Assembly (NCBI GenBank): GCA_964252035.1
Contig: OZ176210.1
Reading direction: 5' to 3' (one strand)
Origin: Podarcis erhardii
Taxonomy: Eukaryota
DNA: 64,000 nt
A program made the position numbers and the translations under genes. Numbering within the stretch: the first letter of the stretch is position 1; each line of letters begins with the position of its first letter. The notes below the pieces were generated by a model that saw nothing but the letters and a program-made list of their open reading frames with translations, was not told the origin of the DNA and made no database searches. This document shows positions 3,213 to 57,276 of this stretch, in pieces.

Positions 3213-3620
3213 GTTGAGAGGCTCCAGAAAGTGACTTGTAACATTTTAGGTAGCTGCTCATTGACATTTTTAATCTGCAATTCCTGTTCTTAACAGAAGC
3301 TTATAAATAACATACCATACATCACTTTATAGTATACATAACACTGGTATACATGTTTCGTGCTCTCCTACCCCTACAACCCTACTATTTAGCTGCAGTA
3401 ATAGTAAAAGAGAGATTCCTAACATTTCATGTTAATAAATGGATTCATTGTTATGATATTTTAATATACTTTTTGCATGTGATTCACGATATCATTTGGT
3501 CTTTATGAAATGCTCCTTTGCAAGTTTTGTGTTTAAAGCTCTTTTTTCACCCCTCCTGCCCTTTCCTTTTTTTCTTTGCCCTTCTGTCCTTCTTATATTT
3601 TCCCCCTCCACACGTATCAG

Positions 3621-6600
3621 ACCAGGATCTTTAGTTAGCAATGGGAAAGTCAGGATCATTCCATTTGATTACGAAGTTGGCCAAGAACAGGAAGAGTGTG
3701 AAGAGAACTATGAGGAATTAGGCAAACAGTTAATAGAAGATTTTTTAGAAAAAAGTCACAGGACTAGAAGTTCACAGGGACGAAGGAGCCCGAGGCTCTC
3801 GAAAAGGGAGAACTTTGGCCATCATGAAAGAGGAAGATACTCACGGAAGGCTTGCCCAGAATCAGGACATCCTGATGTTCCTTGCTATCCAGAGGAATAT
3901 GACACAATAGACAGGAGAAGAAAGAAGAAGCTGAGATATAACAATTTTGAAGAATGCGAGCGAACTATACTGCAAAGCAGTAGTAACCGGAGATTTTCAT
4001 CAGGCAGCATTAAAGCAAGAACTGAACATAACCTATATCCTGATTATGATGAAACTGAGAAATGGGGCAGCAGCCCCATTGAAAGTGAAGAACAGTTACC
4101 GGAATATCCAGTTCTGCGTCCATACAAGAATGGCCTTCTAGTCAAGAGTGGCAAGTTGTCCACTAACCAACGCGCAAAGCATGACTCAGGATCAGTCCAT
4201 TTTGATGGTGAAAATGAGATCCATTCAGAACAGCCAGCTCACTCTTTTGTGCCATTGGGTGCCCTTAAAGAGTTTGGCAGCTGTTCGTCCAGCGTAATCC
4301 TGTACTCCCCAGTTTCTGATGATGATGATGATGAAATGGAAGAAATAGCAATACTTTCCCAAGCATGGCGTGAATCCAGTGTTCGCCATGTTGGAGACCT
4401 TACTGACGCCCGTACTGGAAGTGCCATATCCCTGTTACCAAGGGACAAAAGCTCACATAGGATGAGAGGAGGAAAGCACGGCTTTCTTAAGCAAGACTTG
4501 ACCCTCTCTCCTGTTGAAGAGCCAACGGAAGAATACGTGGACACAATGGATGAACTGCAGTGCTTAGTTGAAACTGTGTCTGAATACTTAGCTGAAAAAG
4601 AGGAGGAGATTAGCAAATTCGAAACCCTTCCTGCCAGCAAAAACGCAAGCGGTTGTGCCTCTCCCAAACTGGCCGGTGCTGATAAGTTGGCGGAGGAAAG
4701 TGCCCCTTTGGAACATGCAAAGCCAGCCGCTTCTGCTGCAGAGGAGAGTGAGGGCAGCAAAGGCATAACAGAGGCATTGCCAGACTTGTCTGGGGTGAAG
4801 AACACAGTCAGCTCCTTATTTAGTTCTTTCACCGAAAAAGTGGGCTCAGGAACAAAGCACTTAACAGCCTCAGTTGAAAAACTTGTATCTCCCACACCAG
4901 AGAAATCTGAAGCCCCTGGTCAACCTGAGGGAGGCATCACAAGTCTGTTTTCAAGTAAGCCTAAGTCTGAGGGTGCCTCTCCAGAACTGAAAGCAGAAAA
5001 CAAATCGGAGGCCAAGCTGTCCACGGCAGCCTCCCCTTCTGTGACCCAGAGTAGCCGTGAGCGAGAAGCCAGTGATGCCAAGGCCAAGATCCCAGAAAAG
5101 ACGGCAGGAGACGATAAGGCTCCTCCAAGTGTCCAGGATGCTTCAGCAAGCTCTGCTCCACCCTCTTCTCTGGACCCCAGCTCAGTCGTGAACTCCGTCT
5201 TCGGCATGTTCAACCCTTTGAAAATCTTCTCCGAAAAGGAAGCACCGAAAAAAGAGACTGCAAAACAGGAGGAGGCTGGGAAGGTGGAAGCCACGCATGC
5301 CAGTGCTTCTGAAGCCAAGGCAAGTGCAAAGGCAGCTGAAGGCAACGCGACGAAACCCACCAACGTTGCGCCTCCCGAAACGAGCAAGAGCGAGGCAGAG
5401 GCGAGCGCAGGCAGCGGCCCCGTCTCCTCCATCTTTGGCAAGCTGTCGAGCTCCGTTAGTTCTTTCAGCTTGAAAGCCAGTTTTGAGAGCCTGGCTGTTC
5501 CCAAGCAGCCAAGTGGGCCGCAGAAGGCTTCTGATGCGCCGCTGCAGGCCACAAGTCAGCCAGATAAAGTTGTTAAAGAACACCCAGGCATGCCAAGAAA
5601 TCCACAACCTGCAGGGAAAGTGCCAGAAAACAAGCCAAGTGAAGCCAAGAAGGAGACTGGTAACGCTCCGCCATTGGAGCAGGGGGAACCATCTGAGAGC
5701 TTTTTCAGCCCACTTAAGAAATCCTTCAGCCAGTTGCTACTCCCTTCTTCTGCTACTGAAACTGTGCCAAAGGAGCCACCACCGGGCTTGGGGAAAAGTC
5801 ACCATTCTGAAGATGATGTCAGGAAAACAAGCTCCGCAAGCAGCGAACCCAACTTCCCTTTCACCGGTAAGCTCCAGATTCCCTTTTTGAGCGGTTTTGG
5901 CTTTTCAGACAAACCACCGCAGGACAACAAAGAGAAGCCAGGAATTTTCACTTCCTTCTTGAAAGCTGCTTCTGTGGAAAACCTGACAGCTTCAAGAGAT
6001 CAAACTGCCCCACCAAGTTTTAGTGGCAAGCCACCAAATGCTGAAGAGGGTCACAAAAGCAGCAACGCAGAAGCTGCCAAAACGGAGTCGTCAAAGTCTC
6101 AGGCAGTTCCCGAGGCACCGCAGAGAAAAGAGGAGCCGATGAGGAAGAAAGAAACCAGAAAAGAAGATGGTGCACCAAAACGTGGAGATAAAGACCAGGG
6201 TGCCTCAGACACGTCACAAATTGCACAGATGGATCATGATACCAAACGCATGGGTGCTCTGGACCACAAAGATTCCAAATGCAGGGGGGAGCTGGCAGCC
6301 CCCACAAAAGAACCTGACTTAAATGCTACAGCAGGAAAGCCAGTGCTTCCTGGTGGAATCAGAGAGGACCAGGCAATGGATGATACTCAGAAGAAGGCCC
6401 CACAGCCAGGGCAGGGGTTGCTCTCAGGCCTCTTCCGGCGGGCGTCTTCAGACCACATAACCCACACGGAAGAGTCCAATGCTAAAAATGAAACGGACAG
6501 CCAGAAGAGCAGATCAGCTGGCTTACTTTCTGGATTATTTAGGTTTGCTTCAAGTGAAAACCTGACCGAAACTATGCCAGATAAGGCAAAACCAGGCTCT

Positions 6601-9600
6601 CTGGGCATAATGAAATTTTTTGAGAGGAGCGAAGAGACGAGTTCTGGTGACAAGTCCGTTGGCTCACATGTGACTCCTGGTCCCCAAGAAAGCACTGGGG
6701 GGAAACAGGAGACGGGCAGCTTCATAAAGAACTTCATGCAGAGGCCAAAAGAAAAAGCGGAGGAGGCAGTGACCGAGACTGCGAAGGCGAATGGTCATTT
6801 GCCTCACCCAGAACTGAGCAAAATGGACAACGGACATGGTCCCGTCCCTTGGCAACCCCCCTCTCAGAATGCTTTAAGCTCACAGCCAAAGATACAAGAC
6901 TTATCGGGGCAGCCAACTCTTTATAGACAACCTACGGATTCCAATATTTATCAAGCAGTTCTCAACGAAAGGTCAAATGAATTTCTCAATTCCTCTTTGC
7001 GGAATGCTAAATTGTATGGCCACTCAGAGCAGCATCTTGCTCTTGAGGAAACAAGGAGCCACTCTAGCTTTGACTGGGAATATGATACAGGAGCATTTTC
7101 TCTCAATCCCCACCAGGTTTCCTTGCCCGTTTACTACGTCTTGCAGCAGAATTCTGTCCCACTGGCTGAGTTTCTGGAATGGCCAGACTCCAGTGATGCC
7201 GTAGTGAACTTGTGTAAAAAAGATGGCAATGCTAATGTTGTGGATTGGAGGTCAAATGCCAATTTTGATGCCCTGAGCGTAGATTTCAGTGTCATGTCAC
7301 ACGAATCGTTTGATCAGTTAGACTTACAAGATTTAGGTCTAGAAGAAACTGAAATGTGGGCAACACATTCTCTGAATGGAAACTTTCCTCCATTTGATGA
7401 CTGCAGCTATATTTTGGAAGAGATGCCCATGGACTTAAGCTATTCGTCGGCATGTGATGGCAATATGTGGACCTTAATTGATCAGGAGTGCTTGAGCTTG
7501 GAAGGCAGTTTTGTCTATTCATCTTATAGCCAGGAGTACCAGGACTGGCTGATGCTGCTTGAGAAGGGCGTGTGGTGGCCATCGGAAGATGGCGATTGTG
7601 GATATTACATGTACAGGGACGGTCAGTTTGTTTATTCTCTGCTCACCGACCCCACTGGGCAGTATGTCTACATTTGCACTCCTGACACTTACACCTACCC
7701 AGACTACTGGGATTATAATTATCCGCAGAGCATTTTGCAGAGCACTGTCTTGGAAGATGACATGATTGCCGTTTGCGGTTTCAAAGTGCCTCTTGGTAAT
7801 GAAGACGAGTTATTCTGGTTTGCTGAAGAGGAGCAATTGGATAATTACTCTGTAAACAAACCACTTGATTTGTCTGTAGCTCTGCAGAGAAGTGATCAAC
7901 TTATGAACATGAATTTAGAGACCTTTTCACAGATGTTTGAGGAGTCCATTTATTACCAGAGAGAGCAGCCTTTAGACTTTTCAGGGTACAAACTTCAAAA
8001 ACTCAAAGTAGACTTTAGGCCTGAGAATGACATGGAGTGGCGCTCAGAAGAGCCTCCCCTGACCCTTGACCTTAGAGTTCACTCCAGGGTGGCTTCCAGT
8101 GGGAGGCTAAAAGATGATGCTCTGCCCAAACATCTGGACAGGACCCCTGCTGTGACAGTTTCTGAAAGTGCACAGGCAAGACGGTTTGGTTTCCATATAT
8201 TCCAGTCTTCTGCCAAGCCTGAGCCTTCATCGGCGTCTCAAAGTGTTACAGAAGTCAAAACCACCGAAGAAGATAAAAAGCCACCTCTGAATAAAGTTGC
8301 ATCTTTATTCTCGGCTTTGGGTGGCCTGATGGGTAAGGGTTTGGAAACGCATGAGACAGTGGAAGATGCGGCTGTGAAGAAAGAAGAACCGGTGGTGTTG
8401 GGACACAAAAACGATGCTCTTCCAACTATGCCACCCAGGAAAACAGGAGAGGATATGCAAAACCAGCAGCAGACTGAGCATGAACAAGAGAGAAAAGAGA
8501 GAGGCAGATTAGTTAAGTCTGTTAGGGATGAAAAGCCAATGATTTCTCAGAAAAAGCCTCAGCTGGTGAGGTCTTCCTCTCAGCTAAGCCAGGGTCCCGT
8601 GGACAGCAAGACCAGTCAGCTGGATAAAAGTGTTAAGCCTGCTCCCCTCCCAAGTCAACAGAAACCCAAAGTGGGTGAGGATGAACCCAAGAAAACCCAG
8701 CCAGCCCCCAGCCAAGCGCCCACAGAGGCTGAGGGCACGTTGTTTAAAAGTGCTCTCAAGATTCTCAGCCTGGGAGAAGACTCCTCCACAACTGCAGCAC
8801 CCAATAAAAGTCAAGGCCCCGGGTTCTTTGATTTCTTTAAAACGCAGGTCAACAAAGCCCCACAGCCACCGCCAGCACCCCAACCAAATCTGACGAAAAA
8901 TGAAGCTGAGAAGAAAATGCCTCAGGAGAAAGTGGAGCCCCCAGGCATTTCATCATTCTTTGGTTCCATAGGGGATCTTTTCAAAGTCGATGCAGGCCCT
9001 GCCCCACCAAGTGCTGCTGCTCCACCAAAGAGTGGAACCCACACCTCCCTGAAACCGAATGACAACGCGGACCAGCGTGGCAGAGAGCCAAGTAAGAGCA
9101 GCACTCCTGCTCCTCAAATCCCCGTGGAGCAGGCTCGTGGGGAAGCTGCCCAGAAGGCCGCAGTCCCTAAGGAAGAACAGCATGGCAAAGTAGGCAAGGA
9201 AGCTGCTCCAGTGAAGAAGGAGGACATCCCCACCGCTGGGAATGCAGAACCCAAGCCTCCCATGCAGGCAGGACCTCGAATGGACCAAGCAAATCGCTCT
9301 CCAGGGCAGCATGGCCATGGACCAGCTGTTGCACCGGGACCGCAAGGCCATGCAGGAGCCATACCTGGTAAAGCTCAGCCAGGAAAAGCCAGTCAGCCAC
9401 CCAGGGAGTCTGGGTTTAGCCTGCCTTTTGGCTTGTCACAGGCAGCACCTTCGAAGCCTCCGCAGGCCCCGCAGCCGGCTGGCAAGAGCATCTTCTCCTC
9501 CTTCTTCGGTGCCCCAGAGAAAGGCCCTGCTCCTGCCCCAGCTCCAGCAGCTCCTAATGCCAAGCCCCCGGAAGCAGAGGCTCTGTTCAAGATGCCTTCT

Positions 9601-12468
9601 TTCTTTTCCGGAGGGCCCACCGCAAAGAAGAACGTGCCTCAGAGCAGCTCCAGCTTCAGCTTTTTCAACCTGACCTCCTTCCTGGATGACAAACCACCGG
9701 CAGCTTTTCCTGACAAGGGGAATATCGCAAAGCCACCTCAGCAGCAAGCCAGCAACCTGGGAAGGCCGCCTCAACAGCAAGCAGACGCAAAGCCATCTAT
9801 GAAGCAGTGTGTTTCTGTTGACTCTGGCATTGGACTTGCCAGACAGCAGGGCTTGAAGGATAAAGAGGCAGCGGCGGGTGTTATAGAAGCAGTACTTGGA
9901 AAGCAAGAGGCTGTTGGCCCGGAGCACAAGGCAAGTGAGTTAAGAACTCCTGCGGCTGAGCATGCTGCGGCAAGTGCTTCAGAAGTGAAAAATGAGGTAG
10001 AGATACCCTTTGTGGCCAGTAAACCTCCTGATGATGGCACAGATAGAGAAGACCACTCAGTCTATCCTGATCCTGGCTCTCAGGTCCCTACGCTGCAGGA
10101 AGACATCGCACCTTCCCTTCCGGAGATTCCACAACCAGAGGAGCAGCTGCAAGACAATGCAGAAAAGAGTGGTGGTATTGTGGTGTCCTCTGAGAAGGAA
10201 TTTGTTCCTTTAGTTGGGAACGAGACTTTTGAAAAGGCAGAGCCCGGTCCAGTTTGTGATGAGACCTCTGTGGCTCTTGAGCCATCTGCTGCTCCTGGAG
10301 ACCTTTCACAGGAGGCTGTACCTGAAGAAAAACCAAGCGCCCCTGAAGTCAAGCCCCCGGAGCCCAAGCAACCTGATAGGACCCCAAATACTGCAGGAGA
10401 GCAGCAGGCTCAGGGCCAGAGGCCTCTCCCTCAAATGGCAGCAGCAGCAACACCTAGCCTGCAGGAGAAACCTAAAGAACCTGAGGCTGACAAATCAGTT
10501 CTAGATTCCTCAGTTGAAATGTTTTCCAGCTTCATGACGAAGATGAAACCAACCAAAACATTATCTGGCTTCTTTTCCCAGCCCCAGACTCCAGCAGCTC
10601 CTAGTGCCCAAAAGAAGAGCACTTCGTTTTTCGGCCTTTCCTCCCTGCCCACTGGGCCTCCTCCAGCATTTACAAGCGATCTCTTTGGCATTTTTAAAGG
10701 AGCAACAGATGAGACCCTTTCAAAGCCTGCAGGGAGGACCACAGGCACTTCAAAACCCCAGGAAATGAGCTCCAGGGCAAAGGAGGCTGTGGGCCCAGTT
10801 CCTGGTAAAGGTCTCGCAAAACAAGATAAAGCCTCTAGGGATGAACTTTTAGGGACAAATGCCGGCAGTGTTTTGAAACAACCGGACCAAACCTATAGGG
10901 CTGAACCTACAGAGAAAGAAGCTAGCAGTGACTTGAAACAAGATGCCCCTTCTGCTTTAGCAGATGAGAGTTTGGGAAAAGAATGTAGGGCAGAATTGGA
11001 AGCTGAAAGCAGTGGCAGACCTGAACATGGTCTGGAACCCTCCCTTAATGCTTCAGAAACTTTAGACTCAAGTAGGGATCAGGGCCCTGAAGTGGTACAG
11101 CTGGACACAAACTTACTGGCATCTGATGAAGCAGGGAAGGCTGCCCTGTGTAGTCAAGAGGTACATGATGCAGTTGAGATGGTGGTGCTGCAGGAGAAGA
11201 GTGAAGTGCCTGTGGAGCCCTTAGAAAATGATGCTGTCCCTGCTGTTGAAGAGCAAGTGAGACCGGCAGGAGAAACAGAGGTTGGCCAAATGGATTTGGA
11301 CAGTACACATGAGCTGGAACCCAAGGTTGGTGAGGAAGATGAACACCTGAAACTGCCAGAACTGACGGATACTTCACTAACCACTGAAGAAGTAACTATA
11401 AAGAATGAGGCAGATGTTGATATTTGCCCACCAGACACGTTTGAGACCCTGGAGATGGAACCCAAAGCTGCTGCCGATGAGGCCCATGACTTGCCCCATC
11501 AGGATATAGAAAAGGTCCCTGAAATAAAATCTGATCTTCCTCCTGAGCAGAAAGAGCCTCTAACCATCAGCGAAGCAGCCCCAGAAGCTGCTCCCTTGAA
11601 AAGCAGTTTGGCTGGTAAGAGCAAGCCAGCCAGTGCTCCTACAGAGGCCAGCAGCACCAAGCCCATGTTTGAAATTCCAAGCATGCCCACTTTGCCCAAA
11701 TTCGGCTTCATGTCTTCTGCAGACAGCAGCAAGCCATTTGGCTCCTTCTTCTCTGCACAGCCGCCTTCGGCAAGCAAGCCTGCGCCTGAGCCAGGCCTCG
11801 TGTCCAGCTTCAACAAGTTTTCCTCAAGTCTGTTTGGTGGAGGAAGTGATGAGAAAGCAGGTAAAGTAGAGGGCACTCCGGGTGCTGTGTTTGGAAAGAA
11901 GCTGGACTTCTCATTTCCGTGGCAGAAAGATGCCAAGGAGCCAAGTCTCAAGAAGGAACCAGGTGTGCCAACACCAAAAGCTTCCTCCAAACAGGAGGTG
12001 GCCCCAATTGCTTCATCCAAACTAGATTTGAAGGCACCAGAAGCTGTCTCGAAAGCCGAGGAACAAGCAGTGGATGTGACCGGGGCTGATGGGAGCCCAA
12101 ACCTCTCTGCCTCTGACCAGCCAGCTGACAGTGCTGCTGATTCAGACCTTTCTTCTAAGCAGCCTGACAGCAAGAGCAATGAATGCTTTGATGGTCCCAC
12201 ACCTGACATTCCGGTGGCGCCCAACAAGGAGCTGGAGCTTGAGGTCTCCAGAGAAACGGAAGATGAGCCAAGCACCATTTCCAGTGAGCCTCCTGGGCTC
12301 CCTTTGGAGGAACCAGCAGAAGGTGCCACACAGGTTCTGGATGAAGTAGAGCAGAAGGAAAGTGTCCCTTGTCCAGAAACGGAAACACTTGCTACTGGAC
12401 TGCAGCCAGCGGAGCAGAGTAGCCCTGAGCCACTCAGGAAGAAAAGGCCAGTAGCCAAAACAGCATGA
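3621..12468 (+). CDS. UNC13B: UNC13B giant alternative exon (~8.85 kb, ~2950 codons), mostly low-complexity P/S/E/A/K-rich
   Basis: Uninterrupted ORF; strong pyrimidine tract and acceptor cacgtatcag at 3620, phase 2 and compatible with exon 1348-1570 (AIR|PGSLVSNGKVRIIP). The 3' boundary is unresolved: the ORF ends TGA TAA at 12466-12471. Confidence 0.85.
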
Positions 12469-12969
12469 TAAATGGTGCCAACTTGTGAGCCATTTATAAT
12501 GCAAGTGCCGTAACAGTAGATGCCTGACCTCGTAGATCAGACTCCTCTAGGCTGTGTTTGTCATTAGTAGTATCCAGTGGTAGGTAGAGTTGTGAACGCT
12601 AGTTGCTAGACTGCCCATCCAGAGCCCTTCCTGCCCTTCTCCTTCTCAACTTCTGGTTTCCTTTGTTCCAAAAGGCTGCAATGACTCTTCTCCTTTGCTC
12701 TCCGTTTGTGTTGTGTCCTTGTGAGTGAGCTGCTTTGAGTATTAGTTTCATTAACCTTCCATAGCCTAATTGTGTGCGTGAGAAAACAACTTGCACCTCT
12801 AGTTGACATGGTGGGAGGGAGGAAATCGGGGGCTCTCTTGGTTTGCAGAAAGCTTAGTTGGACAACATACAAGGCATTCACATTTTAAGGTGGGGGAGAG
12901 ACCCAGATGGCAGCAAAAGCTGTTTCAGGGGTTGCAGTTCAGTCACCTGCAGCATAACTTTTCTACGCC

Positions 12970-13194: not shown

Positions 13195-14516
13195 AAAACT
13201 TCCTCCCTCCCACCAGGAGGAGTTAAACATGGCCGTGGACTATTAAAGGGACTAATGCAGAAACATCCAGTTCTTGCTGCCCGGAAGCTGTTACTGCCCA
13301 GCTAACATGATTCAATTTTTCTCTATCAGCTGTATTCAGCGGCATTAGCTGAATGTGCTTTTCTGTGTTAGGCTGCAGGCATCTGGAGCCAATGAGGAGC
13401 TCCTTGGTGCCCCCATCAGGTCTCCAATCAAGATGATAACTGGTTTTCTGGTTTACCATTTCTCAAAAACATGCTTAATTGTTCCATATTGAAGAGAACT
13501 GCAGTGATTTCATGTTACAGCTATCAGTATATTAGTGACTTTTGCTCCCTGTTTACCCCTGTCCGGGGGATGATTGGGGTTGGTGTTCTTGCTGCCCCTC
13601 CCTAGTTACAGAACTGCTTGTCACTAAAATCATTGCTAAATCTGCACTCCTCACCCGCCATCTCTAGACAATTGGCCTAGCAGGGATCCTGCTTCAAGCT
13701 TTTCCCTTTCTGCCCAGCCTGTTTCCCAAGGAATAGATGGGATTTTCGCAGTGTAGCTGCCTTGGGTCCTCTTGCAGATGTCTCTGCCTATGTGGGCTGC
13801 CAAAAGCCAGGCGGCACTTAAATAGCGGCCCAGAAGCATTTGTGCCCCTTCCCTCTTAGAATTCCACAATGGAGAGAGAGCGTGTGGGTGTCTTGTTGAA
13901 TTAACAGCTCCTGGTGCAGTAACCCCAACCTTATAATAATCAGTCACTCCCAAGCAGCAACAGCAATGGGCCCATGTTGTGCTGGAAGACAGGGCTGATT
14001 TTTCTAAATGGCAGCTACAACAGGATCCATTCTCAGCCGCTGGAGAAACTTAAGAATGTGTTAATGAAATGGGAGTGAAGATGAAACCCTCATGTCCCAG
14101 AATCCAAGTTCAGTTGACATGCTGGGGGCAAACGTTGTAAGAAGGTGTTGCACTTAGCAGCTTAGAGGTTCAATATGCACAAAACTTTTGCTGCCATTCT
14201 TAATTTTCCTATGGCCTGTAAACAATTTATAGGATGCACAGCAGATGATGATATCTGTTTCTGATTGACATATCAATAGGGTCCAGAGGCTTAGGCCCAG
14301 CACAAAAATTGCAAACACAAATTTGGAAGTGGCGGGTGACTGAGAACAGTGGCTGCAATGTGCAAGAGACATTTTGCTTGGCTAGAGTTTCCATTTGATG
14401 CTTTGGCCTGGTGTAGTTAGGATTTGCGCGCTCTCTCTCTCTCTCTCTCTGCATGCATTCTGCTGTTTCCTGGTTGCCAAGACCTTTTGACTTACTAATG
14501 CTTTGCTCTCTCACAG

Positions 14517-14813
14517 TCCTGCCAGCAGTAGTAAGTTTGGTTCCTCCTGTAACATCAGTCAGGGAAGCTCTCAGCTGAGTGAGCTGGACCAATATCACGG
14601 GAGTGTGCCCGGCTCCGAACACGAGGACGAGCTCACAGAAGGGGTGCCTGCTGCTGCTCCTCCTCATTCAACAGAGGGCCCTGCACCATCTAGTGAGCAG
14701 CATGAGCCCCAGGAATTGCACAGGGAAGGAGAGGGGAAGGTGAAAGAGCAAGCCACACCTCAACTACCTCCTGAAGTGGACGAGCCCAAAGAAGCCACCA
14801 AGACACCGGGCAG
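14517..14813 (+). CDS. UNC13B: UNC13B exon (S)[27 protein letters not shown]...KTPG, phase 2 to 2
   Basis: Branch-like ttactaat, acceptor ctctcacag, donor GGCAG|gtaggt; matches Munc13-2 [28 protein letters not shown]. Confidence 0.93.
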
Positions 14814-14969
14814 GTAGGTGGTGCACGTTGGCCACGGATTCCTTGGAGTTGAACTTGAGGCCACTTTTCTGGTTGATCTTGGGAGAGACAAACAGGCTAT
14901 GGGTGTAGTGCCATACCTGGTTTTGAGTAGTCCACTGGTGTCTAGGGTCAGAAAGGGTGGGACAAACGT

Positions 14970-15239: not shown

Positions 15240-15501
15240 TCATCATCATTTTACACCCATCTAGTGACTAATGGGGTGCATTCCTTACAGGGTTCTCTAC
15301 CACAGTCCCTGTTGGCCACACTTTCTGTTCTTTCCATGCCATTCTCTGTCTTTTGCTGGCCATCCCAGGTCTCTTGGGGCCAACTGTTCTCAGCATTTGT
15401 TCCCACCATTACAATAAATGGTTCTTTTCATGTGTTAAGTTTCATGAGACTGCTCTTGATTTTCCAGTGCTCATTTTTCCCTCGTTTTTCTTTTTTGCAA
15501 G

Positions 15502-15592
15502 TCACCTTGATGAAAACGAACTTCTCCTGCTTCCCGCTGCAAGAGCCCGCTGGATCCGAGCCATTAATAAAGTGCGGCTTCAGTTTGAAGAG
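15502..15592 (+). CDS. UNC13B: UNC13B exon with the ubMunc13-2 calmodulin-binding motif (AARARWIRAINKVRLQFEE)
   Basis: Acceptor ttttttgcaag, donor GAG|gtaggg, phase 2 to 0; W-x3-[AV]-x2-V CaM anchor of Munc13-1/ubMunc13-2. Confidence 0.95.
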
Positions 15593-16019
15593 GTAGGGTC
15601 CATGAAATGTCCCTCCCCCCATCCTTCCACCTGTGTCTGTGCTTGTAAACCTTGCCGTGACTTTTGTCTGAAGGTTGCTTTGCTTGTCTAAAGGAGACAC
15701 CGTTCTGGGGCAACTGCACAAATGGTGCATGTGCCCCTCTGGTACCAACAACTTGCTGAAGTTGACCGTGGTGGGCTTAATTTGCTGACCCCATGGCAGA
15801 GGGGTGCAGAACTTGTGCCCCACCAGATTTTGTTGGGCTCTTTCCTCAGCCCCAACAGCCAACAGGGCCGGGATTGTGGCGAAGTTGGAGCTCAGCGACA
15901 TCTTGGGGCACGAAGTTGGCTACCTGTGTTGTGTAGAAGAACCAGGATTATTTATGGAAGTGTTGTGTTGACATCACTGTTCCGCTGTGTCTGTAGTTTG
16001 TCTTCTGAGGCCCTTCTCT

Positions 16020-16110: not shown

Positions 16111-18111
16111 ATGCTTTCCCAACCCGTTGTGGGTGTGTGGGAGAGGAGACCCTTCCACGAACTACTGTGCTGCTCCTGGCCGCCTCCCGATTTCACTCCA
16201 GAGAGCACCCAGAAGCCGAGTGTTGTCTGAACAGGCCGGAGCAGAGAGTGGCAGCAGGTTCCCTCTCTGCGCCATTTTGTTGTTGACTTGTGCCACTTGG
16301 ATGCTGCCCTGGCCAGCAGAAGGCCATTGATGTGCCCCAGATCAAAATAGGCTCATGTTTGCAACCTTGTCGTTTTAGATGGATCAGAATTTACACAATG
16401 TCACTGGGCTCTTTCGAGAGTGGGCTTAGCATTGCAACTGTGTTGTTGAGGTATCACAAAAGGGTCCTTAGCAGCAATGATATTTTTCATGGAAAGGGGA
16501 AATCTGAGCTTAAAGTGGGGAAATGCAGGGTGGTAGTTTTAGGGAATTCTGCAAAATAAGAGCATACAAAAGAAGCACCTCGTCCACAAAGAGCACCTAG
16601 CTGACACTGATGCCAGGTTTTCTTAGCAGTTTCTCACGCACGGCAGAAACTGTGTTTTGCTACACAGAGTATCAAAACACTTTTGTAATTCTTAAGCAAG
16701 TCAGAAGCTTGTTGAGTTGAATTAAAAGATCCTGACGGGTATAAGAAATGTGAGATATTTTCAAAAAGCCGTCAACCCAAGAGTTTTAACAGAACAACCC
16801 GGCGAGTTTGTCTGTCTTCTGAAAAATGCTGCTTTGAATCATTTAGTGAATTGTTTTGAAAAGTAAAACTCTCGAGCGCTGGAGGCTTCTGTGCACAAAG
16901 AGAATTGGTGGTGTGTGAACGACAAGCGGCTCCTGATGGCTGCAAGCAGACCCCTCGTGCCTTCACGTGCGTGCCTCCCTCCGCCTGCTTTCTTGTGGGG
17001 CAGAGAAACTGGCAGGATGCACCGTGGAAAGCTTTTGCCACTGCGAGATGCTACACTGGCGTCTCTCCAGAAGCACCAAGGTTTTCTCTTGATGCGTCTC
17101 CTGGGAGCGGGAGATAGGAGTGGAGTACAAACTTGTCTGCGATGAGCAGGAAGGTTCCTTGCGTGCCTGTCAAGATTGGTACATTAACTCTTTTTCGTTA
17201 TTCTGGCTTGTGCTTGTGTTGTGTTTCACTGTTCACGGAAGAGAGTTGTATTCAGTAGCAGCAACAATAAGTTGGGTATCCCCCTTTGCATCTTCTATAA
17301 CCTTTTTTGGAAACTCTTATAGTTGCAATACTCATCCTCAATTGCACCCATTGCAGAGCTGTTCAGGATAGCAAACTATCATCCCAACAGGAATTTGGTT
17401 CCAGTGGAAATAGCATGTTTCAATAATGGACCTGGTGGAGTAGGCTCCATTCCTGAAATCGTTTGACCCAAACTGGAGCCTGGCAATTCAGTCATGCCCT
17501 CGCACATGTGTGTGACCCACATGGTCTGAGTCATCAGGCAAATCAAAGGTTTGGAACGTGGATGCCTTCTTTTGCTTTGGGCAGAGTCTGACTCCCCTGT
17601 GGGCCATGGGACACTCTTGAAATGCAAAGGTGCACACTGGTTAAAGGGTGAATTTCCCCCATTTTGGGGTTCTCCTCTGTTGCAAATGAACCTTAACCAG
17701 TCCTGGGTCAAATCGGGACTTGAAAGCTGTGAACGTTTGGCTGAAATCTTAATCCTTTCACACCAGATACGCTTGGAGTTCAGGCAAGCAAGCCAGACTG
17801 AATTTTGCTCTGCTGCGTTTGTCAGCAGCTGGTACCGCAGCTGTTGTGTGTGGAAAGCAAAACGGAGAAGGAGAGCCTTGTGTGTCTTGTAGATTTAAGT
17901 ACTATGAAGCGAAAGACTGGTCAGAGACACCGTTGTCTGTCTTGGAGTTGCAGGTTCCTGTGCGGGGCTTCTGGTGTGGAAACTTTACATCTAGAGTGCA
18001 AAATAACAAATATGTTTCACGTAGTGTAGAAAAGTCTATACATATGTAGTATTATTCTAAAAGTGTTATGTGGCATATACTTTTGACTTCCCTTTAAAAA
18101 AACTGTTTACA

Positions 18112-20178
18112 ACTGGCTTTCTACCAGGCAGGCAATTGTCAGACAATGTGAGGAATATTATAGACATTTTAGAACTTCTGGAAACTGACATAAATAGAAA
18201 AGCTGTTTTGATTTTTGTGGATGCAGAGAAAGCCTTTGACAATATTTGTTGGAGCTTTATGAAGAGGAATCTCCAAGGGATGGGGGTAGGCAAGAACTTT
18301 GAAAATGGTATAAGTGCAATTTACTCTGAGCAAAAGGCCAAACTAATTGTAAATGGTATGGTTATGGACGAAATTCCAATAGAGAAAGGGACACGACAGG
18401 GATGCCCAATTTCCCCTCTATTGTTTATATCGGTACTGGAGGTTTTCCTAAATATGATTAGAAGAGACCAGCTGGTTAAAGGTATACAGGTCGGAACTAA
18501 ACATTATAAGTTAAGAGCATTTGCAGATGATCTAGTCTTGACATTACAACAGCCAGAAACCAGTACAAAAAGAGTTCTGGAACTTATTGAAATATTTGGT
18601 CAGGTAGCAGGTTTTAAACTAAATAAACATAAGACAAAGGTGTTGGGAAAAAATCTTACGGTGGGGGAAAAAGATAGTTTTCAAAGAGAAACTGGTTTGG
18701 AAATTACTAAAAAGGTAAAATATCTGGGGGTGAATTTAACATCTAAGAATGTGAACCTATTTAAAGACAATTATGAGAAATGTTGGGCCGAAGTGAAGAA
18801 AGATTTCGACATATGGTCAAGATTGAGACTTTCCTTGTTAGGCCGAATTGCTGTTATTAAGATGAATGTATTGCCGAGATTGTTGTTTCTGTTCCAGACA
18901 TTGCAAATTCTAGATAAGATGGACTGTTTCAAGAAGTGGCAGAAAGACATATCTAAATTTGTCTGGCAGGGCAAAAAACCCAGAATAAAATTTAAGATTT
19001 TGACTGATGCAAAGGATAGAGGGGGCTTTGCCCTGCCGGACTTAAAACTTTATTATGAAGCAGCAGCTTTTTGCTGGCTGAAACCATGGCTACTTCTTGA
19101 GAATACAGACATTCTGGACCTGGAAGGTTATGATAATAGTTTTGGTTGGCATGCATATTTATGGTATGATAAGGTAAAGGTACATAGAAATTTTAAAAAC
19201 CATATTGTTAGGAAAGCATTGTATAATGTATGGAATCGATATAAAGATTTGCTTGAAAGTAAAACCCCCAGGTGGTTGTCACCAATGGAAGCCAAGGCGG
19301 TAAAAAGACTGAACATGGATACAGATTGGCCAAAATATTGTGAAATTATAGAATATGATGGTGAAAAGTTGAAACTACAGAGTTTTGAGAAATTGAAACC
19401 TAAAGTCCGAGATTGGTTACATTATTTCCAGATCAATGAAACTTTTAAGCAGGACAGAAAACTAGGATTTCAGAAGGAGAGGTCAAAATTAGAAACAGAA
19501 TTGCTAGAACCCAATACTAAGAATTTGTCTAGAATGTATAATCTGCTGCTAAAATGGAATACACAGGATGAAACGGTTAAATCAGCTATGATTAAGTGGG
19601 CACAGGATATTGGTCATGATATTATGTTTGCTGACTGGGAGCAGTTATGGACCACAGGTATTAAATTTACGGCATGCAGTGCCCTGAAAGAGAACATAAT
19701 GAAAATGATCTATAGGTGGTACATGACTCCAGTCAAGCTTGCAAAGATATATCATTTGCCCAATAACAATTGTTGGAAGTGCAATGAATGTGAAGGAACT
19801 TTTTATCACCTTTGGTGGACCTGCCCAAAGATTAAGGCCTACTGGGAAATGATCTATAATGAAATTAAGAAAATCCTTAAGTGGACATTTGTAAAGAAAC
19901 CGGAGGCTTTTCTCCTGGGCATGGTCGGCCAATTGGTACCAAAGAAAGATAGGACCTTTTTTATGTATGCAACAACAGCAGCAAGAATCCTTTTGGCGAA
20001 GTATTGGAAGACTAAAGAATTACCTACTCTGGAAGAATGGCAGACCAAGGTGACTGAATTTATGGGACTGGCAGAGATGACCGGCAGAATCCGTGACCAG
20101 AGGAAAGAGACAGTGGAGGAGGACTGGAAAAAATTTAAAATCTATCTTAAAAATTGTTGTAAAATTTCGGAATGTTAA
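18112..20178 (+). CDS. L1 ORF2p fragment: reverse transcriptase plus C-terminal CCHC knuckle, lacking the endonuclease
   Basis: Motifs GFLPGRQ, DAEKAFD, GTRQGCPISPLLF, AFADD, YLGVNLT and CWKCNECEGTFYHLWWTC; no stops or frameshifts. Confidence 0.92.
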   Translation, partial: TGFLPGRQLSDNVRNIIDILELLETDINRKAVLIFVDAEKAFDNICWSFMKRNLQGMGVGKNFENGISAIYSEQKAKLIVNGMVMDEIPIEKGTRQGCPISPLLFISVLEVFLNMIRRDQLVKGIQVGTKHYKLRAFADDLVLTLQQPETSTKRVLELIEIFGQVAGFKLNKHKTKVLGKNLTVGEKDSFQRETGLEITKKVKYLGVNLTSKNVNLFKDNYEKCWAEVKKDFDIWSRLRLSLLGRIAVIKMNVLPRLLFLFQTLQILDKMDCFKKWQKDISKFVWQGKKPRIKFKILTDAKDRGGFALPDLKLYYEAAAFCWLKPWLLLENTDILDLEGYDNSFGWHAYLWYDKVKVHRNFKNHIVRKALYNVWNRYKDLLESKTPRWLSPMEAKAVKRLNMDTDWPKYCEIIEYDGEKLKLQSFEKLKPKVRDWLHYFQINETFKQDRKLGFQKERSKLETELLEPNTKNLSRMYNLLLKWNTQDETVKSAMIKWAQDIGHDIMFADWEQLWTTGIKFTACSALKENIMKMIYRWYMTPVKLAKIYHLPNNNCWKCNECEGTFYHLWWTCPKIKAYWEMIYNEIKKILKWTFVKKPEAFLLGMVGQLVPKKDRTFFMYATTAARILLAKYWKTKELPTLEEWQTKVTEFMGLAEMTGRIRDQRKETVEEDWKKFKIYLKNCCKISEC

Positions 20179-36971: not shown

Positions 36972-38417
36972 TGGACTTCCTGACTCTGCTCCGAGCGCCT
37001 GTTCCTCTCCTCCTCCTCCTCCAGGACCATTCAGCACCCACTATTTCACCCCTATTTATTTTTAAGGAACAACTGCAAATGTTAACTCTCGCCAGGTTTA
37101 TGGTAAATCTTTCTTACCAATGCAAAATAATAGTTACAGAAACTGGCTGAGTTTCTTGCTCACTAGGCCAGTCGCAGTTGGTGTAGAATTATGTAATTGT
37201 CCAAGGTTTCAATTCTGTGAAACCTGGCATATTTCTCAGTTGCGAGGAGGTGGCCCAATAAAAATGTCTTCTGTATTATATACGTATCTCATGCCGCTAG
37301 TGCCCACTAGAGTAACAGCAAGGAAAGAGGCACCTATCTTCTTCCAAAACGCTGAAGTTTTTTTGCGCAGTGAAGTGGCACGCAAATTTTGTTAAATTCA
37401 TAAAAAGAAGTGTATTCCTGCCGCCAAGGAGATTGCAATCTAACCTTCAACATGGGGAGGGGGAGAACGTTCTGTTCACTTGCCTGTATCTTCATTAAGG
37501 GATGAGGACTAAGTGGTTGTGCTGAGCCTTCCCTTAACTGATTTCAGGATATTAGCAGATGACCTTAAAGCTATAAAAAGAAAGCTTCTGTATGCAGGCA
37601 AGGCCTTTTCTTCGTCTTCTTTCATCATTTTTCTTGTGAAAATGATAACTGCACACAGACAAATCTATGCCCATACAAAGATGAAGCTGGAACTGGCTTG
37701 TGCCTGCGCCTCTTAGGGAACAGGGCAGAGCTGCTGGCTGCATGCCAAGGAGCACTTTGGGCAGGTAATGGATACGCCAGGATATTGTACTTGAGGGGGA
37801 TAAATAGAGAGGGCTCTGCTGCTAAGACTTCAATTTCGATAAAATTCCGGTCTCCCTGGTGGAAAAGGAAACCATTCTCATAAAGCAAATTTGGGGGGAG
37901 GTGAAGGCATCCTTTACTTGTTGCAAGAGTCAGGGAGACCTTCTTGTTTCACCACTTGGCCCCAGGACCTTCATTCAGTTGGAAGGCTGAAATGGAACAG
38001 CAGGTTATACCGGCATGCTTGCAAAAATAGATTTGTCCTGCTGCACGGGTGCAATTTTGTTGGATTACGTGGCCCAAGCTAGTGTGTGTATGTATGTGTG
38101 TGTGTGAATGTGTGAGTCGCTTTTTTCTCCACTGACTCCGATATCCAGCGTCTCTGTCCCTTCTCTTGACAGCAGCTTCTGATGAGTCTTAATCCTTGGC
38201 CGAGAGAGCCTTGCTGGGCAGGCAGCGAGGGGCAGAGGCCTCTGCCGCTTTGTGGCATGATGAGAGGGCGGCAACATGGCCACTGAGGATGTGCGCCGGC
38301 AGAGGCACCCTAAGGCTAGAAGATGACATTGCTTCTGTGCTTAGAACATCTGCTGTGAAACTCCTAACTGGGCAGCCCTCTCAGAAGCAGAAGGCCCTGC
38401 TGTTTCTGGAGGAGAAG

Positions 38418-52899: not shown

Positions 52900-52978
52900 G
52901 CCAGCTGGGGGTCTCTATGGCATCGACAGCATGCCTGACCTGCGCAAGAAGAAGCCCACCCCACTTGTCAGTGACCTG
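52900..52978 (+). CDS. UNC13B: UNC13B exon [26 protein letters not shown], phase 2 to 0
   Basis: Acceptor gctttctag, donor CTG|gtgaga; conserved Munc13 motif. Confidence 0.96.
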
Positions 52979-56063: not shown

Positions 56064-56138
56064 TCGCTGGTCCAGTCCCGGAAGGCCGGAATTACCTCAG
56101 CCATGGCCACCCGAACTTCTCTCAAGGACGAGGAGCTG
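56064..56138 (+). CDS. UNC13B: UNC13B exon [25 protein letters not shown]
   Basis: Acceptor ttttctttcccag, donor CTG|gtaagg; identical to recalled mammalian sequence. Confidence 0.97.

Positions 56139-57009: not shown

Positions 57010-57276
<267 letters not shown>

What the first reader, a model, noticed from the sequence alone, without database searches (positions are those of the whole stretch)
7426..8076. Cluster of PxDLS CtBP/RIBEYE-binding motifs in the giant Munc13-2 exon
Seen: PMDLS (7426-7440), PLDLS (7861-7875), PLDFS (7969-7983) and PPLTLDLR (8053-8076) within ~220 aa. Known: PxDLS is the CtBP cleft ligand; Bassoon/Piccolo anchor CtBP1 at presynapses; RIBEYE, the ribbon scaffold, contains CtBP2; ubMunc13-2 is the photoreceptor ribbon-synapse Munc13. 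Inference: the giant isoform could dock the priming machinery directly on RIBEYE/CtBP, or sequester CtBP1. I know of no description of this.
Basis: partly seen in the sequence, partly recalled or inferred. Interest (0 to 1): 0.87.

Follow-up and report, generated by a model that had tools for sequence, protein, structure and literature searches.

The report
Conserved CtBP-motif cluster in giant Munc13-2
A huge optional exon of the synaptic vesicle-priming gene Munc13-2 (UNC13B) carries four short docking motifs, two of them textbook CtBP/RIBEYE-binding sites, that are almost unchanged from sharks to mammals; this predicts an undescribed link between the priming machinery and the CtBP/ribbon scaffold, but binding is untested.

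Summary
PMDLS, PLDLS, PLDFS and (PP)LTLDLR sit at the stated coordinates, in frame, in a 2,942-codon exon (3621-12446) of a lacertid lizard UNC13B gene.

They are not chance. About 0.03 PxD[LF]S are expected in this 401-aa island and 3 are seen. A fifth copy elsewhere, PGDLS, is not conserved.

- The four pentamers are among the eight most conserved non-overlapping pentamers of the best-conserved part of the exon.
- They are kept in catshark, sturgeon, bowfin, teleosts, amphibians, sauropsids and mammals.
- Spacing from motif 2 to 3 to 4 is fixed at about 31-36 residues.
- One teleost group has multiplied the motif to 12-14 copies.

Motifs 1, 2 and 4 lie in segments AlphaFold leaves unstructured. 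Downstream flanks are basic, as in CtBP ligands, not acidic as in SUMO-interaction motifs.

Caveats: PLDFS and TLDLR depart from the CtBP consensus. PLDFS abuts a predicted strand. Binding and expression of the giant isoform in ribbon-bearing sensory cells could not be tested.

My reading, at about 0.5, is a multivalent CtBP-family docking array like Piccolino's. The ribbon-specific claim is about 0.15-0.2. I found no paper describing it. The scan had noted this stretch before (s1-244804).

The parts
3621..12446 (+). Giant alternative exon of UNC13B (8,826 nt = 2,942 codons, frame-neutral), from acceptor cag|A to an inferred GC donor
   Evidence: Open frame. UNC13B orthologues from lizards to sturgeon. 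Acceptor read and donor. Length and phase computed. No Pfam family.
6937..8259 (+). Conserved island (exon residues 1100-1540) holding the motif cluster; its centre (residues about 1201-1500, nt 7240-8139) is the best-conserved part of the exon
   Evidence: Per-100-aa identity profile against 8 species peaks at residues 1201-1500. Alignment A1, 24 species. Profile search of 1.84 billion proteins finds only UNC13B-type giant proteins.
7201..7221 (+). Degenerate upstream copy VVNLCKK ([VIA][VMIA]N[LIF]C[KQ][KR] in tetrapods)
   Evidence: (N91 invariant, C93 at 90% or more). Weak candidate only.
7276..7290 (+). Degenerate upstream copy SVDFS (S[LIVM]D[LF]S in sauropsids, lost in mammals)
   Evidence: Mean conservation 0.52, weak.
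7426..7440 (+). Motif 1, PMDLS (P[MIV]DLS followed by YSS); fits the CtBP consensus
   Evidence: D, L and S invariant and P at 90% or more in 24 species. Among 120 hits: PIDLS 61, PMDLS 47, PVDLS 4. pLDDT about 30, coil.
7525..7683 (+). Predicted small folded core between motifs 1 and 2: a helix (7525-7563) plus a four-strand aromatic beta-meander (7570-7683, WWPSEDGDCGYY...SLLTD..GQYVY)
   Evidence: AlphaFold2 on the 75-sequence alignment gives pLDDT 64-72 here only. No fold match above Z 3.4. No PDB sequence relative.
7861..7875 (+). Motif 2, PLDLS: the exact canonical CtBP ligand
   Evidence: P invariant in 75 sequences, D and L at 90% or more. PLDLS in 108 of 120 hits. Second most conserved pentamer of the island. 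pLDDT about 31, coil.
7915..7965 (+). Conserved predicted helix between motifs 2 and 3 (MNMNLExFSQMFEES block)
   Evidence: H178-194 of the 246-residue model, pLDDT about 44-52.
7969..7983 (+). Motif 3, PLDFS: Phe at position 4, outside the CtBP consensus, and copy-specific
   Evidence: Most conserved pentamer of the island. PLDFS in 115 of 120 hits. PVDF[ST] in teleosts. Followed directly by a predicted strand at 7987-8007, pLDDT about 67.
8062..8076 (+). Motif 4, TLDLR ([TI]LDLR in tetrapods, AFDL[RT], [IV]IDLS or AADLT in fishes): no Pro at position 1
   Evidence: D and L invariant in 24 species and at 90% or more in 75. Variants listed. pLDDT about 39.
12447..12452 (+). Inferred GC-type splice donor (AAAAG|GCCAGT) that lets the exon join the exon starting at 14517 in frame; stop TGA at 12466-12468 if unspliced
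   Evidence: Same AAAAG|GC in a bird and a mammal contig. Predicted full-length proteins of six species join at this point.

Best explanation
The four strings are functional short linear motifs in the one strongly conserved island of a giant, frame-neutral alternative exon of UNC13B (Munc13-2).

Most likely they form a multivalent docking array for the PxDLS-binding cleft of CtBP-family proteins: CtBP1, CtBP2 and the RIBEYE B-domain. Each motif would add as a short extended strand into one cleft. Motifs 1 (P[MIV]DLS) and 2 (PLDLS) are canonical. Motif 4 ([TI]LDLR) and the upstream degenerate copies would add avidity. Motif 3 (PLDFS) may be partly structural.

CtBP and RIBEYE-B are dimers, tetramers or filaments, so a cluster with fixed 31-36-residue spacers would bind far better than one motif, as shown for Piccolino.

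The exon lies between the ub-type N-terminal exons (C2 domain) and the C1/C2B/MUN exons. The giant isoform would therefore tether a RIM-binding, vesicle-priming protein to CtBP1-containing Bassoon/Piccolo scaffolds or to ribbons.

Shown here: the motifs, their non-randomness, deep conservation, fixed spacing, unstructured context, basic flanks, and multiplication in teleosts. Inferred: the identity of the partner, the cellular site, and inclusion of the exon in MUN-containing mRNA in this species.
For: - Motifs and frame.
- Enrichment about 100-fold over composition.
- D, L, S of motif 1, P, D, L of motif 2, P, L, F, S of motif 3 and D, L of motif 4 are invariant in 24 species from sturgeon to mammals. 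They remain at 90% or more, or invariant, in 75 sequences including teleosts.
- Catshark has PMDLS, PLDLS, PLDFS and AFDLR.
- The four motifs rank 1, 2, 5 and 8 among non-overlapping pentamers of the island. Their conservation is 0.88-0.99 against 0.46-0.74 in the flanks.
- The unconserved PGDLS at 10294-10308 serves as an internal control.
- Motifs 1, 2 and 4 lie in coil with pLDDT 30-40, while the neighbouring core reaches about 70.
- Downstream flanks carry net +0.8 charge per 6 residues against a background of -0.2 to -0.3, with Lys enriched 2-6 residues after the S/T. This resembles PxDLSxK-type CtBP ligands (own knowledge of E1A, RIP140, Knirps).
- Teleost orthologues carry 12-14 copies against about 0.5 expected, in triplets about 30 residues apart and in tandem units of about 110 aa.
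- Literature: PIDLS and PLDLS are prototypical CtBP motifs, DL to AS abolishes binding, and PVDMS is accepted as PLDLS-like (PMC4063256). Piccolino's seven PXDLS motifs, with about 25- and 45-residue spacers, crosslink RIBEYE B filaments; one motif is ineffective and six are strong (bioRxiv 10.64898/2026.04.28.721253). The RIBEYE cleft is needed for Piccolo co-localisation (PMC10760060).
Against: - No binding could be tested, and co-folding with CtBP was not possible with these tools.
- PLDFS (Phe at position 4) and TLDLR (no Pro) break the consensus.
- L versus F at position 4 is strictly copy-specific for more than 400 million years, which a generic motif array would not require.
- The motifs are not isolated islands. 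The whole block from motif 2 to motif 3 is conserved. A strand with pLDDT about 67 follows motif 3. Part of the signal may therefore be structural.
- Low AlphaFold confidence is not proof of disorder.
- Nothing shows that the giant isoform is made in photoreceptors, hair cells or neurons. Published ubMunc13-2 is about 190 kDa (10.1101/2021.05.28.446138).
- Loss of Munc13-2 barely affects photoreceptor ribbons (PMC6539712).
- In this lizard the exon can leave only through a GC donor; the closest annotated relative (Zootoca X1, 3,208 aa) ends inside the exon.
Confidence: 0.5

Rival explanations
1. The motifs are structural elements of one folded or folding-upon-binding module (helix, aromatic beta-meander, further strands and a helix). 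They are conserved because they pack inside the molecule, not because they recruit CtBP. The resemblance to PxDLS is coincidental.
For: - The island is conserved as a whole, with fixed spacing between motifs 2, 3 and 4.
- Motif 3 abuts a predicted strand of pLDDT about 67, next to a core of pLDDT about 70.
- Position 4 is copy-specific: always L in motif 2 and always F in motif 3.
- The block between motifs 2 and 3 is as conserved as the motifs.
Against: - Motifs 1, 2 and 4 fall in segments with pLDDT 30-40 in both models, even with 75 sequences.
- Flanks drift in mammals while the pentamers stay.
- Teleosts multiplied motif-bearing units far from the core, in low-complexity sequence. That fits independent linear modules, not one fold.
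- No known fold or PDB relative.
Confidence: 0.25
2. The motifs are true linear docking motifs, but for a partner other than CtBP. One option is an unknown receptor for x-hydrophobic-D-[LFM]-[ST]-x-K at the active zone. Another, for the F class (DF[ST]xYxLxK), is an endocytic adaptor appendage.
For: - The family consensus across vertebrates is broader than PxDLS: [PAVIT][VLMI]D[LFM][ST].
- Many teleost copies lack Pro.
- The invariant Phe copy does not fit CtBP.
- The resemblance of DFxxYxxxK to the [DE]xxFxx[FL]xxxR appendage motif is from my own knowledge only.
Against: - PLDLS and P[MIV]DLS are exact matches to the best-characterised ligand class, with the typical basic downstream residues (PMC4063256).
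- No alternative receptor for this pattern is known to me.
Confidence: 0.15
3. The cluster is a set of SUMO-interaction motifs of type b (core like the VIDLT of PIAS) that reads poly-SUMO chains on presynaptic proteins.
For: - Teleost copies such as VVDLT, IVDLT, AVDLT and VIDLS match the SIMb core.
- Clustered SIMs give avidity for SUMO chains (PMC3901395).
- Upstream flanks in tetrapods are acidic, net -1.3 per 6 residues.
Against: - High-affinity SIMs depend on acidic flanks (PMC3901395). Here the downstream flanks are basic, +0.8 per 6 residues with Lys enriched.
- Tetrapod copies carry Pro at position 1 and Ser rather than Thr.
- The F and M variants do not fit SIMb.
Confidence: 0.05
4. 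Chance: four look-alike strings in a long, compositionally biased exon, with no function.
For: - The pattern was chosen after seeing the sequence.
- One further PxDLS (PGDLS, 10294-10308) is indeed a chance, unconserved match.
Against: - Expected 0.03 against 3 observed in the island.
- 0 of 5,000 whole-exon shuffles gave such a cluster.
- The motifs are near-invariant across jawed vertebrates and are top-ranked pentamers.
Confidence: 0.01

Closest known systems
Piccolino/Piccolo C-terminal PXDLS array (PVDLT and six further motifs) binding the RIBEYE B-domain
   Same: - A giant, mostly disordered active-zone protein encoded largely by very long exons.
- Several conserved PxDL[ST] motifs separated by tens of residues.
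- Multivalency is the proposed working principle.
- Teleost UNC13B copies even include PVDLT itself.
- Sources: PMC10760060; bioRxiv 10.64898/2026.04.28.721253; PMC6539712.
   Different: - No sequence homology: the profile search finds only UNC13B-type proteins.
- Only two canonical motifs in tetrapods.
- Motif 1 is separated from the rest by 145 residues that contain a small predicted folded core.
- One copy has Phe at position 4.
- Binding and ribbon localisation are shown for Piccolino and untested here.
Bassoon (and Piccolo) binding of CtBP1/RIBEYE at conventional and ribbon synapses
   Same: An active-zone scaffold that carries PXDLS motifs and anchors a CtBP-family protein at the presynapse (discussion of bioRxiv 10.64898/2026.04.28.721253; own knowledge of tom Dieck 2005 and Ivanova 2015).
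   Different: Here the carrier would be a priming factor with C2A, C1, C2B and MUN domains rather than a pure scaffold. No experimental link exists.
Nuclear CtBP partners with PxDLS motifs (adenovirus E1A PLDLS, E2F7 PIDLS, p66-beta PVDMS; ZEB-type multi-motif clusters)
   Same: - Identical core pentamers (PLDLS, PIDLS).
- DL is the critical pair.
- Basic residues often follow.
- Several partners carry two or three motifs close together (PMC4063256; the ZEB cluster is from own knowledge).
   Different: Those are transcription regulators acting in the nucleus. UNC13B is a cytoplasmic, presynaptic protein.
Clustered SUMO-interaction motifs (RNF4; PIAS SIMb VIDLT)
   Same: A short hydrophobic-x-D-L-T core that binds by strand addition, with avidity through clustering (PMC3901395).
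   Different: SIMs need acidic flanks. Downstream flanks here are basic, and Pro at position 1 with Ser at position 5 is typical of CtBP ligands.

Membership tests
UNC13B (Munc13-2) gene, ub-type giant isoform | Orthology of the exon and of its flanking exons to UNC13B | tested here: met
   The best hits are named unc-13 homolog B, at 95% identity to Zootoca. tblastn of three full-length orthologues places ub-type exons upstream and the downstream shared (C1-region/core) exons downstream in the window.
UNC13B (Munc13-2) gene, ub-type giant isoform | The exon is spliced in frame into MUN-containing mRNA | tested here: inconclusive
   Exon length is 3 x 2,942 and a GC donor sits in the right phase. 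The same GC donor is present in a bird and a mammal, and gene models of six species join there. No transcript evidence was obtained: the Logan contigs were genomic, and the Zootoca model ends in the exon.
CtBP-cleft ligand, PxDLS class | Core consensus P-[LVIPME]-[DENS]-[LM]-[VASTRG] (ELM pattern, quoted from memory) | tested here: met
   Motif 1 (PMDLS/PIDLS/PVDLS) and motif 2 (PLDLS) match in nearly all species.
CtBP-cleft ligand, PxDLS class | The same consensus, applied to motifs 3 and 4 | tested here: not met
   PLDFS has Phe at position 4. TLDLR/ILDLR/AFDLR lack Pro or Gly at position 1. They can be filed only as degenerate copies.
CtBP-cleft ligand, PxDLS class | The motif lies in an accessible, unstructured segment | tested here: inconclusive
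   Motifs 1, 2 and 4 are coil with pLDDT 30-40, while the adjacent core reaches about 70. Low confidence is compatible with disorder but does not prove it. Motif 3 borders a predicted strand.
CtBP-cleft ligand, PxDLS class | Evolutionary conservation above the flanks | tested here: met
   Motif conservation is 0.88-0.99 against 0.46-0.74 in the flanks. The motifs rank 1, 2, 5 and 8 of the non-overlapping pentamers and are kept from shark to mammals.
CtBP-cleft ligand, PxDLS class | DL-dependent binding to the hydrophobic cleft of CtBP1, CtBP2 or RIBEYE-B | not testable with these tools
   This needs pull-down or ITC, or complex prediction with a CtBP sequence, which could not be supplied here.
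Multivalent PXDLS arrays of active-zone scaffolds (Piccolino type) | Several motifs separated by spacers of tens of residues | tested here: met
   Spacings in the window are 145, 36 and 31 residues. Across species they are 34-36 and 30-36. Teleost triplets sit about 27-36 residues apart.
Multivalent PXDLS arrays of active-zone scaffolds (Piccolino type) | Sequence homology to Piccolo or Bassoon | tested here: not met
   The profile search of 1.84 billion representatives returned 68 clusters. All that carry names are UNC13B-type or unannotated giant proteins of jawed vertebrates. The resemblance is convergent.
Multivalent PXDLS arrays of active-zone scaffolds (Piccolino type) | Presence of the protein at ribbons or CtBP1-positive active zones | not testable with these tools
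   [quoted passage not shown] Whether the giant isoform contributes is unknown.
SUMO-interaction motif, type b | Core [PILVM][ILVM]DLT with acidic flanks | tested here: not met
   The core is partly matched, mainly in teleost copies. Downstream flanks are net basic at +0.8 per 6 residues. The requirement for acidic flanks is taken from PMC3901395.

The most novel reading that the evidence does not exclude
The giant UNC13B isoform is a second, Piccolino-like multivalent cross-linker of RIBEYE B-domains and CtBP1. It physically couples a RIM-binding C2A domain and the MUN priming domain to the ribbon or the Bassoon/Piccolo-CtBP1 scaffold. The number of motif copies (4-6 in tetrapods, 12-14 or more in one teleost group) tunes the avidity. 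A weak, conserved GC splice donor decides whether the scaffold carries the priming domain or ends as a C2A-plus-array decoy.
Probability: 0.18. Interest if true: 0.85.

Novelty: new member of a known kind. Interest (0 to 1): 0.66.

Why it matters
How release sites and priming factors are held in register with the synaptic ribbon, and what CtBP1 does at conventional active zones, are open questions. [quoted passage not shown]

A deeply conserved PxDLS cluster in an uncharacterised isoform of Munc13-2 of roughly 4,000 or more residues would give a direct, testable molecular link between priming machinery and the CtBP/RIBEYE lattice.

It also draws attention to a giant UNC13B isoform that I could not find described in any paper. 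It is kept open for 8-15 kb in every jawed-vertebrate lineage sampled.

The prediction is cheap to test: one fragment, DL to AS mutants, CtBP cleft mutants, and co-expression with RIBEYE in HEK cells.

Tried and rejected
- **Pfam on the whole exon and on two teleost giant proteins:** no family.
- **PDB sequence search with the 75-sequence profile:** nothing.
- **First AlphaFold2 run (24 sequences, 441 aa):** uninformative, mean pLDDT 31. The second run (75 sequences, 246 aa) resolved only a small core.
- **Fold search of that model against 48,161 chains:** best Z 3.4, no credible fold.
- **Logan contigs carrying the giant ORF:** I hoped they were spliced transcripts. They are genomic, starting in the intron and reading through the donor, so they give no expression evidence.
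- **Literature searches:** Munc13-2 or UNC13B with CtBP, giant exon or large exon found no description, only incidental co-mentions.
- **Rfam and DNA repeat scans of 6900-8300, and ORFs on the minus strand:** nothing that could explain the conservation otherwise.
- **Rejected readings:**
  - Chance.
  - SUMO-interaction motifs as the main reading, because downstream flanks are basic.
  - PP1 RVxF docking at KVDF, which is not conserved in mammals, where it reads KGDF.
  - A paxillin-type LD helix at motif 2, because mammals have prolines there.
- **Sequence choice:** primate sequences were left out of alignments A1 and A2. One macaque row was used only in the local alignment.
Full report
**1. 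What is there**

The window holds one uninterrupted reading frame from 3640 to 12465 on the plus strand, 2,942 codons. A polypyrimidine tract and cag|A acceptor precede it at 3620|3621.

- PMDLS 7426-7440
- PLDLS 7861-7875
- PLDFS 7969-7983
- PPLTLDLR 8053-8076

A protein search with this part of the frame returns 168 proteins. The best is 'protein unc-13 homolog B isoform X1' of the lizard Zootoca vivipara at 95% identity. Other squamates, turtles, birds, marsupials, placentals, amphibians and a sturgeon follow. Many are 4,100-4,950-residue models carrying C2, C1 and MUN Pfam domains.

tblastn of three such models onto the window places ub-type N-terminal exons at 1338-1580 and 2155-2298. The giant exon comes next. 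Downstream exons sit at about 14517-14815, 15500-15625, 52901-52978, 56064-56138, 57052-57270 and from 60071.

**2. More than chance**

From the exon's own composition, 0.135 PxDLS are expected in 2,942 residues and 0.020 in the 401-residue island around the cluster. For PxD[LF]S the island expectation is 0.029, against three observed. Only 5 of 20,000 shuffles of the island reached two copies and none reached three. None of 5,000 shuffles of the whole exon put three copies within 200 residues.

The pattern was chosen after the fact, so conservation is the stronger argument.

**3. Conservation**

*24 species, sturgeon to placentals (alignment A1).* The invariant columns include D-L-S of motif 1, P, D, L of motif 2, P, L, F, S of motif 3 and D-L of motif 4. 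The remaining motif positions are mostly at 90% or more.

Mean conservation of the four pentamers is 0.90, 0.98, 0.99 and 0.88. The 15 residues on either side score 0.59, 0.68, 0.74 and 0.46.

Among all pentamers of the 441-residue island, PLDFS ranks first and PLDLS second. DLSYS (motif 1) and TLDLR are 5th and 8th among non-overlapping pentamers, level with the aromatic core.

*120 listed hits.* Motif 1 is PIDLS (61), PMDLS (47) or PVDLS (4). Motif 2 is PLDLS in 108. Motif 3 is PLDFS in 115. Motif 4 is x[TI]LDLR in most.

*Wider search.* A profile search of 1.84 billion representative proteins found 68 clusters. All that carry names come from jawed vertebrates and are UNC13B-type or unannotated giant proteins. 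They include:
- catshark: PMDLS, PLDLS, PLDFS, AFDLR
- bowfin: PIDLS, PLDLS, PMDFS, AFDLT
- arowana 'Unc-13 homolog B': VMDLS, PLDLS, PLDFS, AFDLS

(motif lists.)

In a 75-sequence alignment that includes teleosts, the Pro of motif 2 is still invariant. D-L of motif 2, D-F of motif 3 and D-L of motif 4 stay at 90% or more.

*Internal control.* A fifth PxDLS in the exon, PGDLS at 10294-10308, is not conserved at all.

*Position in the exon.* The island (exon residues about 1201-1500) is the best-conserved stretch of the whole exon in every comparison.

**4. Anatomy around the motifs**

AlphaFold2 with 24 sequences gave nothing confident (mean pLDDT 31). With 75 sequences on residues 1249-1494, a small core emerges at pLDDT 64-72:
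- a helix (nt 7525-7563)
- a four-strand aromatic meander (nt 7570-7683)
- a short strand at CGFKV
- a helix between motifs 2 and 3 (nt 7915-7965)
- a strand right after motif 3 (nt 7987-8007, pLDDT about 67)

Motifs 1, 2 and 4 lie in coil with pLDDT about 30-40. Motif 3 sits at the edge of the predicted strand.

The core matches no solved fold (best Z 3.4), no PDB sequence and no Pfam family.

Spacing is nearly fixed. Motif 2 to 3 is 34-36 residues from shark to mammals and teleosts. Motif 3 to 4 is 30-36 residues. Motif 1 lies 145 residues before motif 2, across the core.

Two further degenerate copies lie upstream: VVNLCKK at 7201-7221, and SVDFS at 7276-7290, which is kept only in sauropsids.

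The copies share no DNA-level repeat. Nothing on the other strand and no Rfam family explains the conservation.

**5. Multiplication in teleosts**

One teleost group of orthologues (4,000-6,000 residues) carries 12-14 matches to [PAVITL][VLMIF]D[LFM][ST], against about 0.5 expected. These include PVDLT, PMDLT, PIDLT, AMDLS, PVDFS, VVDFT, IVDLT and TLDMS. They are arranged in triplets about 27-36 residues apart and in tandem units of about 110 residues, each with xLDMSxK.

Such multiplication in low-complexity surroundings, far from the aromatic core, is what one expects of independently acting linear motifs selected for valency. It is hard to reconcile with a purely structural role.

**6. Which partner**

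P-hydrophobic-D-L-S/T is the ligand of the hydrophobic cleft of CtBP proteins. PIDLS and PLDLS are called prototypical. DL to AS abolishes binding. PVDMS is accepted as PLDLS-like. All are sensitive to the cleft mutation A58E (PMC4063256).

The RIBEYE B-domain keeps this cleft. Cleft mutants lose co-localisation with Piccolo, whose PVDLT is conserved in vertebrates (PMC10760060). Piccolino has seven PXDLS motifs with alternating spacers of about 25 and 45 residues that crosslink RIBEYE B filaments. One motif is ineffective and six are strong. Bassoon is also cited as a PXDLS carrier (bioRxiv 10.64898/2026.04.28.721253; PMC6539712).

The obvious look-alike is the SUMO-interaction motif of type b, with a VIDLT core, whose affinity depends on acidic flanks (PMC3901395). 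I tested the flanks. Over 176 teleost and 40 tetrapod, shark and sturgeon copies, the six residues downstream carry net +0.8 charge, against a background of -0.2 to -0.3. Lys is strongly enriched 2-6 residues after the S/T.

That argues against SIMs. It fits the PxDLSxK/R habit of CtBP ligands such as E1A, RIP140 and Knirps, which I quote from my own knowledge.

Against a simple CtBP reading:
- Motif 3 always has Phe and motif 2 always Leu at position 4. That copy-specific constraint is unexplained by a generic array.
- Motif 4 and many teleost copies lack Pro.

**7. Is the exon joined to the priming domains?**

The frame ends at TGA 12466-12468. The next exon (acceptor cag|T at 14516|14517) needs two bases of a codon from upstream. 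The sequence AAAAG|GCCAGT at 12446|12447 is a good GC-type donor in exactly that phase. It makes the exon 8,826 nt, which is 3 x 2,942.

The orthologous spot reads AAAAG|GCTAGT in a bird contig and AAAAG|GCCTGT in a mammal contig, each with a stop 6-7 codons further on. Full-length gene models of Anolis sagrei, a turtle, a wallaby, a whale, a dog and a squirrel join ...K|S-P-[AT]-[GS]-S-S at this point.

The exon is thus a frame-neutral cassette with a conserved weak donor. If spliced, the array sits between C2A and C1-C2B-MUN. If not, the protein ends as C2A plus the array, as in the Zootoca model (3,208 aa). I found no transcript evidence either way, because the Logan contigs are genomic.

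**8. Verdict**

*Shown:*
- a real, non-random cluster conserved across jawed vertebrates (shark to mammals)
- two canonical CtBP-type motifs plus two to four degenerate copies
- unstructured segments flanking a small unknown core
- fixed spacing and basic flanks
- copy-number expansion in teleosts

*Inferred:*
- that the partner is CtBP1, CtBP2 or RIBEYE (confidence about 0.5; that at least one motif binds in vitro about 0.7)
- that this happens at ribbons (about 0.15-0.2)

*Rivals:*
- structural role (0.25)
- another partner (0.15)
- SUMO (0.05)
- chance (0.01)

*Caveats from the literature:*
- Munc13-2 loss has little effect on photoreceptor ribbons (PMC6539712).
- The ubMunc13-2 studied so far is about 190 kDa (10.1101/2021.05.28.446138).

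No paper in the library links Munc13-2 or UNC13B to PxDLS or CtBP, or describes the giant exon. It is a new candidate member of a known kind, the PxDLS-bearing active-zone scaffolds, and not a new kind of system.

Noticed in passing
window 12440-12470 and 14510-14520; L001 11795-11830; L002 8605-8630: The giant exon leaves through a conserved GC-type donor: AAAAG|GCCAGT in the lizard, AAAAG|GCTAGT in a bird and AAAAG|GCCTGT in a mammal. An in-frame stop lies 6-7 codons downstream in all three. This gives the phase the next exon needs and makes the exon exactly 3 x 2,942 nt. It also suggests a regulated choice between a full-length isoform and a C2A-plus-exon truncated isoform.
   Followed up: partly
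window 10294-10308: A fifth PxDLS (PGDLS) lies in a poorly conserved part of the exon and is not conserved in any other species. It serves as an internal control for a chance match.
   Followed up: yes
window 7525-7683: The aromatic core between motifs 1 and 2 (a helix plus the WWPSEDGDCGYY...SLLTD..GQYVY beta-meander) is the only part AlphaFold2 models with pLDDT about 70. It has no Pfam family, no PDB sequence relative and no fold match above Z 3.4. It is a conserved domain of unknown fold, specific to UNC13B giant isoforms of jawed vertebrates.
   Followed up: partly
window 3640-12446 (e.g. about 4950-5000, 6350-6480, 9000-9400, 10700-10800, 11700-11800): The rest of the giant exon is studded with short hydrophobic motifs such as SSLFSSF, SVFGMFNPLKIF, GLLSGLFR (twice), GFFDFFK, SSFFGSIGDLFK, SIFSSFFG, SFFGLSSL, DLFGIFKG and FGSFFS. 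They are spaced through low-complexity Pro/Ala/Ser/Lys/Glu sequence. They may be membrane- or vesicle-binding, or condensate 'sticker' motifs. I did not analyse them.
   Followed up: no
teleost proteins P0144-P0165 versus P0127-P0143: Teleost orthologues fall into two groups. One is about 3,000-3,500 residues with about four motif copies. The other is about 4,000-6,000 residues with 12 or more copies, including tandem units of about 110 aa each carrying xLDMSxK. They may be the two paralogues left by the teleost genome duplication.
   Followed up: partly
window 18070-20178 (+): An intact 702-aa ORF with reverse-transcriptase-like sequence (FADD motif), probably a LINE element, lies in the intron downstream of the giant exon.
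   Followed up: no
window 38196-40838 (+): An 880-aa open frame lies downstream of the giant exon. It is probably the bMunc13-2-specific N-terminal exon and is not matched by the ub-type full-length models. It holds no PxDLS-type motif apart from a weak LVDMR. If it is the b-type first coding exon, transcripts from the b promoter cannot include the giant exon.
   Followed up: partly
window 7930-7949 and 8117-8136: A 20-nt inverted repeat, 80% complementary, with arms 167 nt apart inside the island. Probably chance.
   Followed up: no
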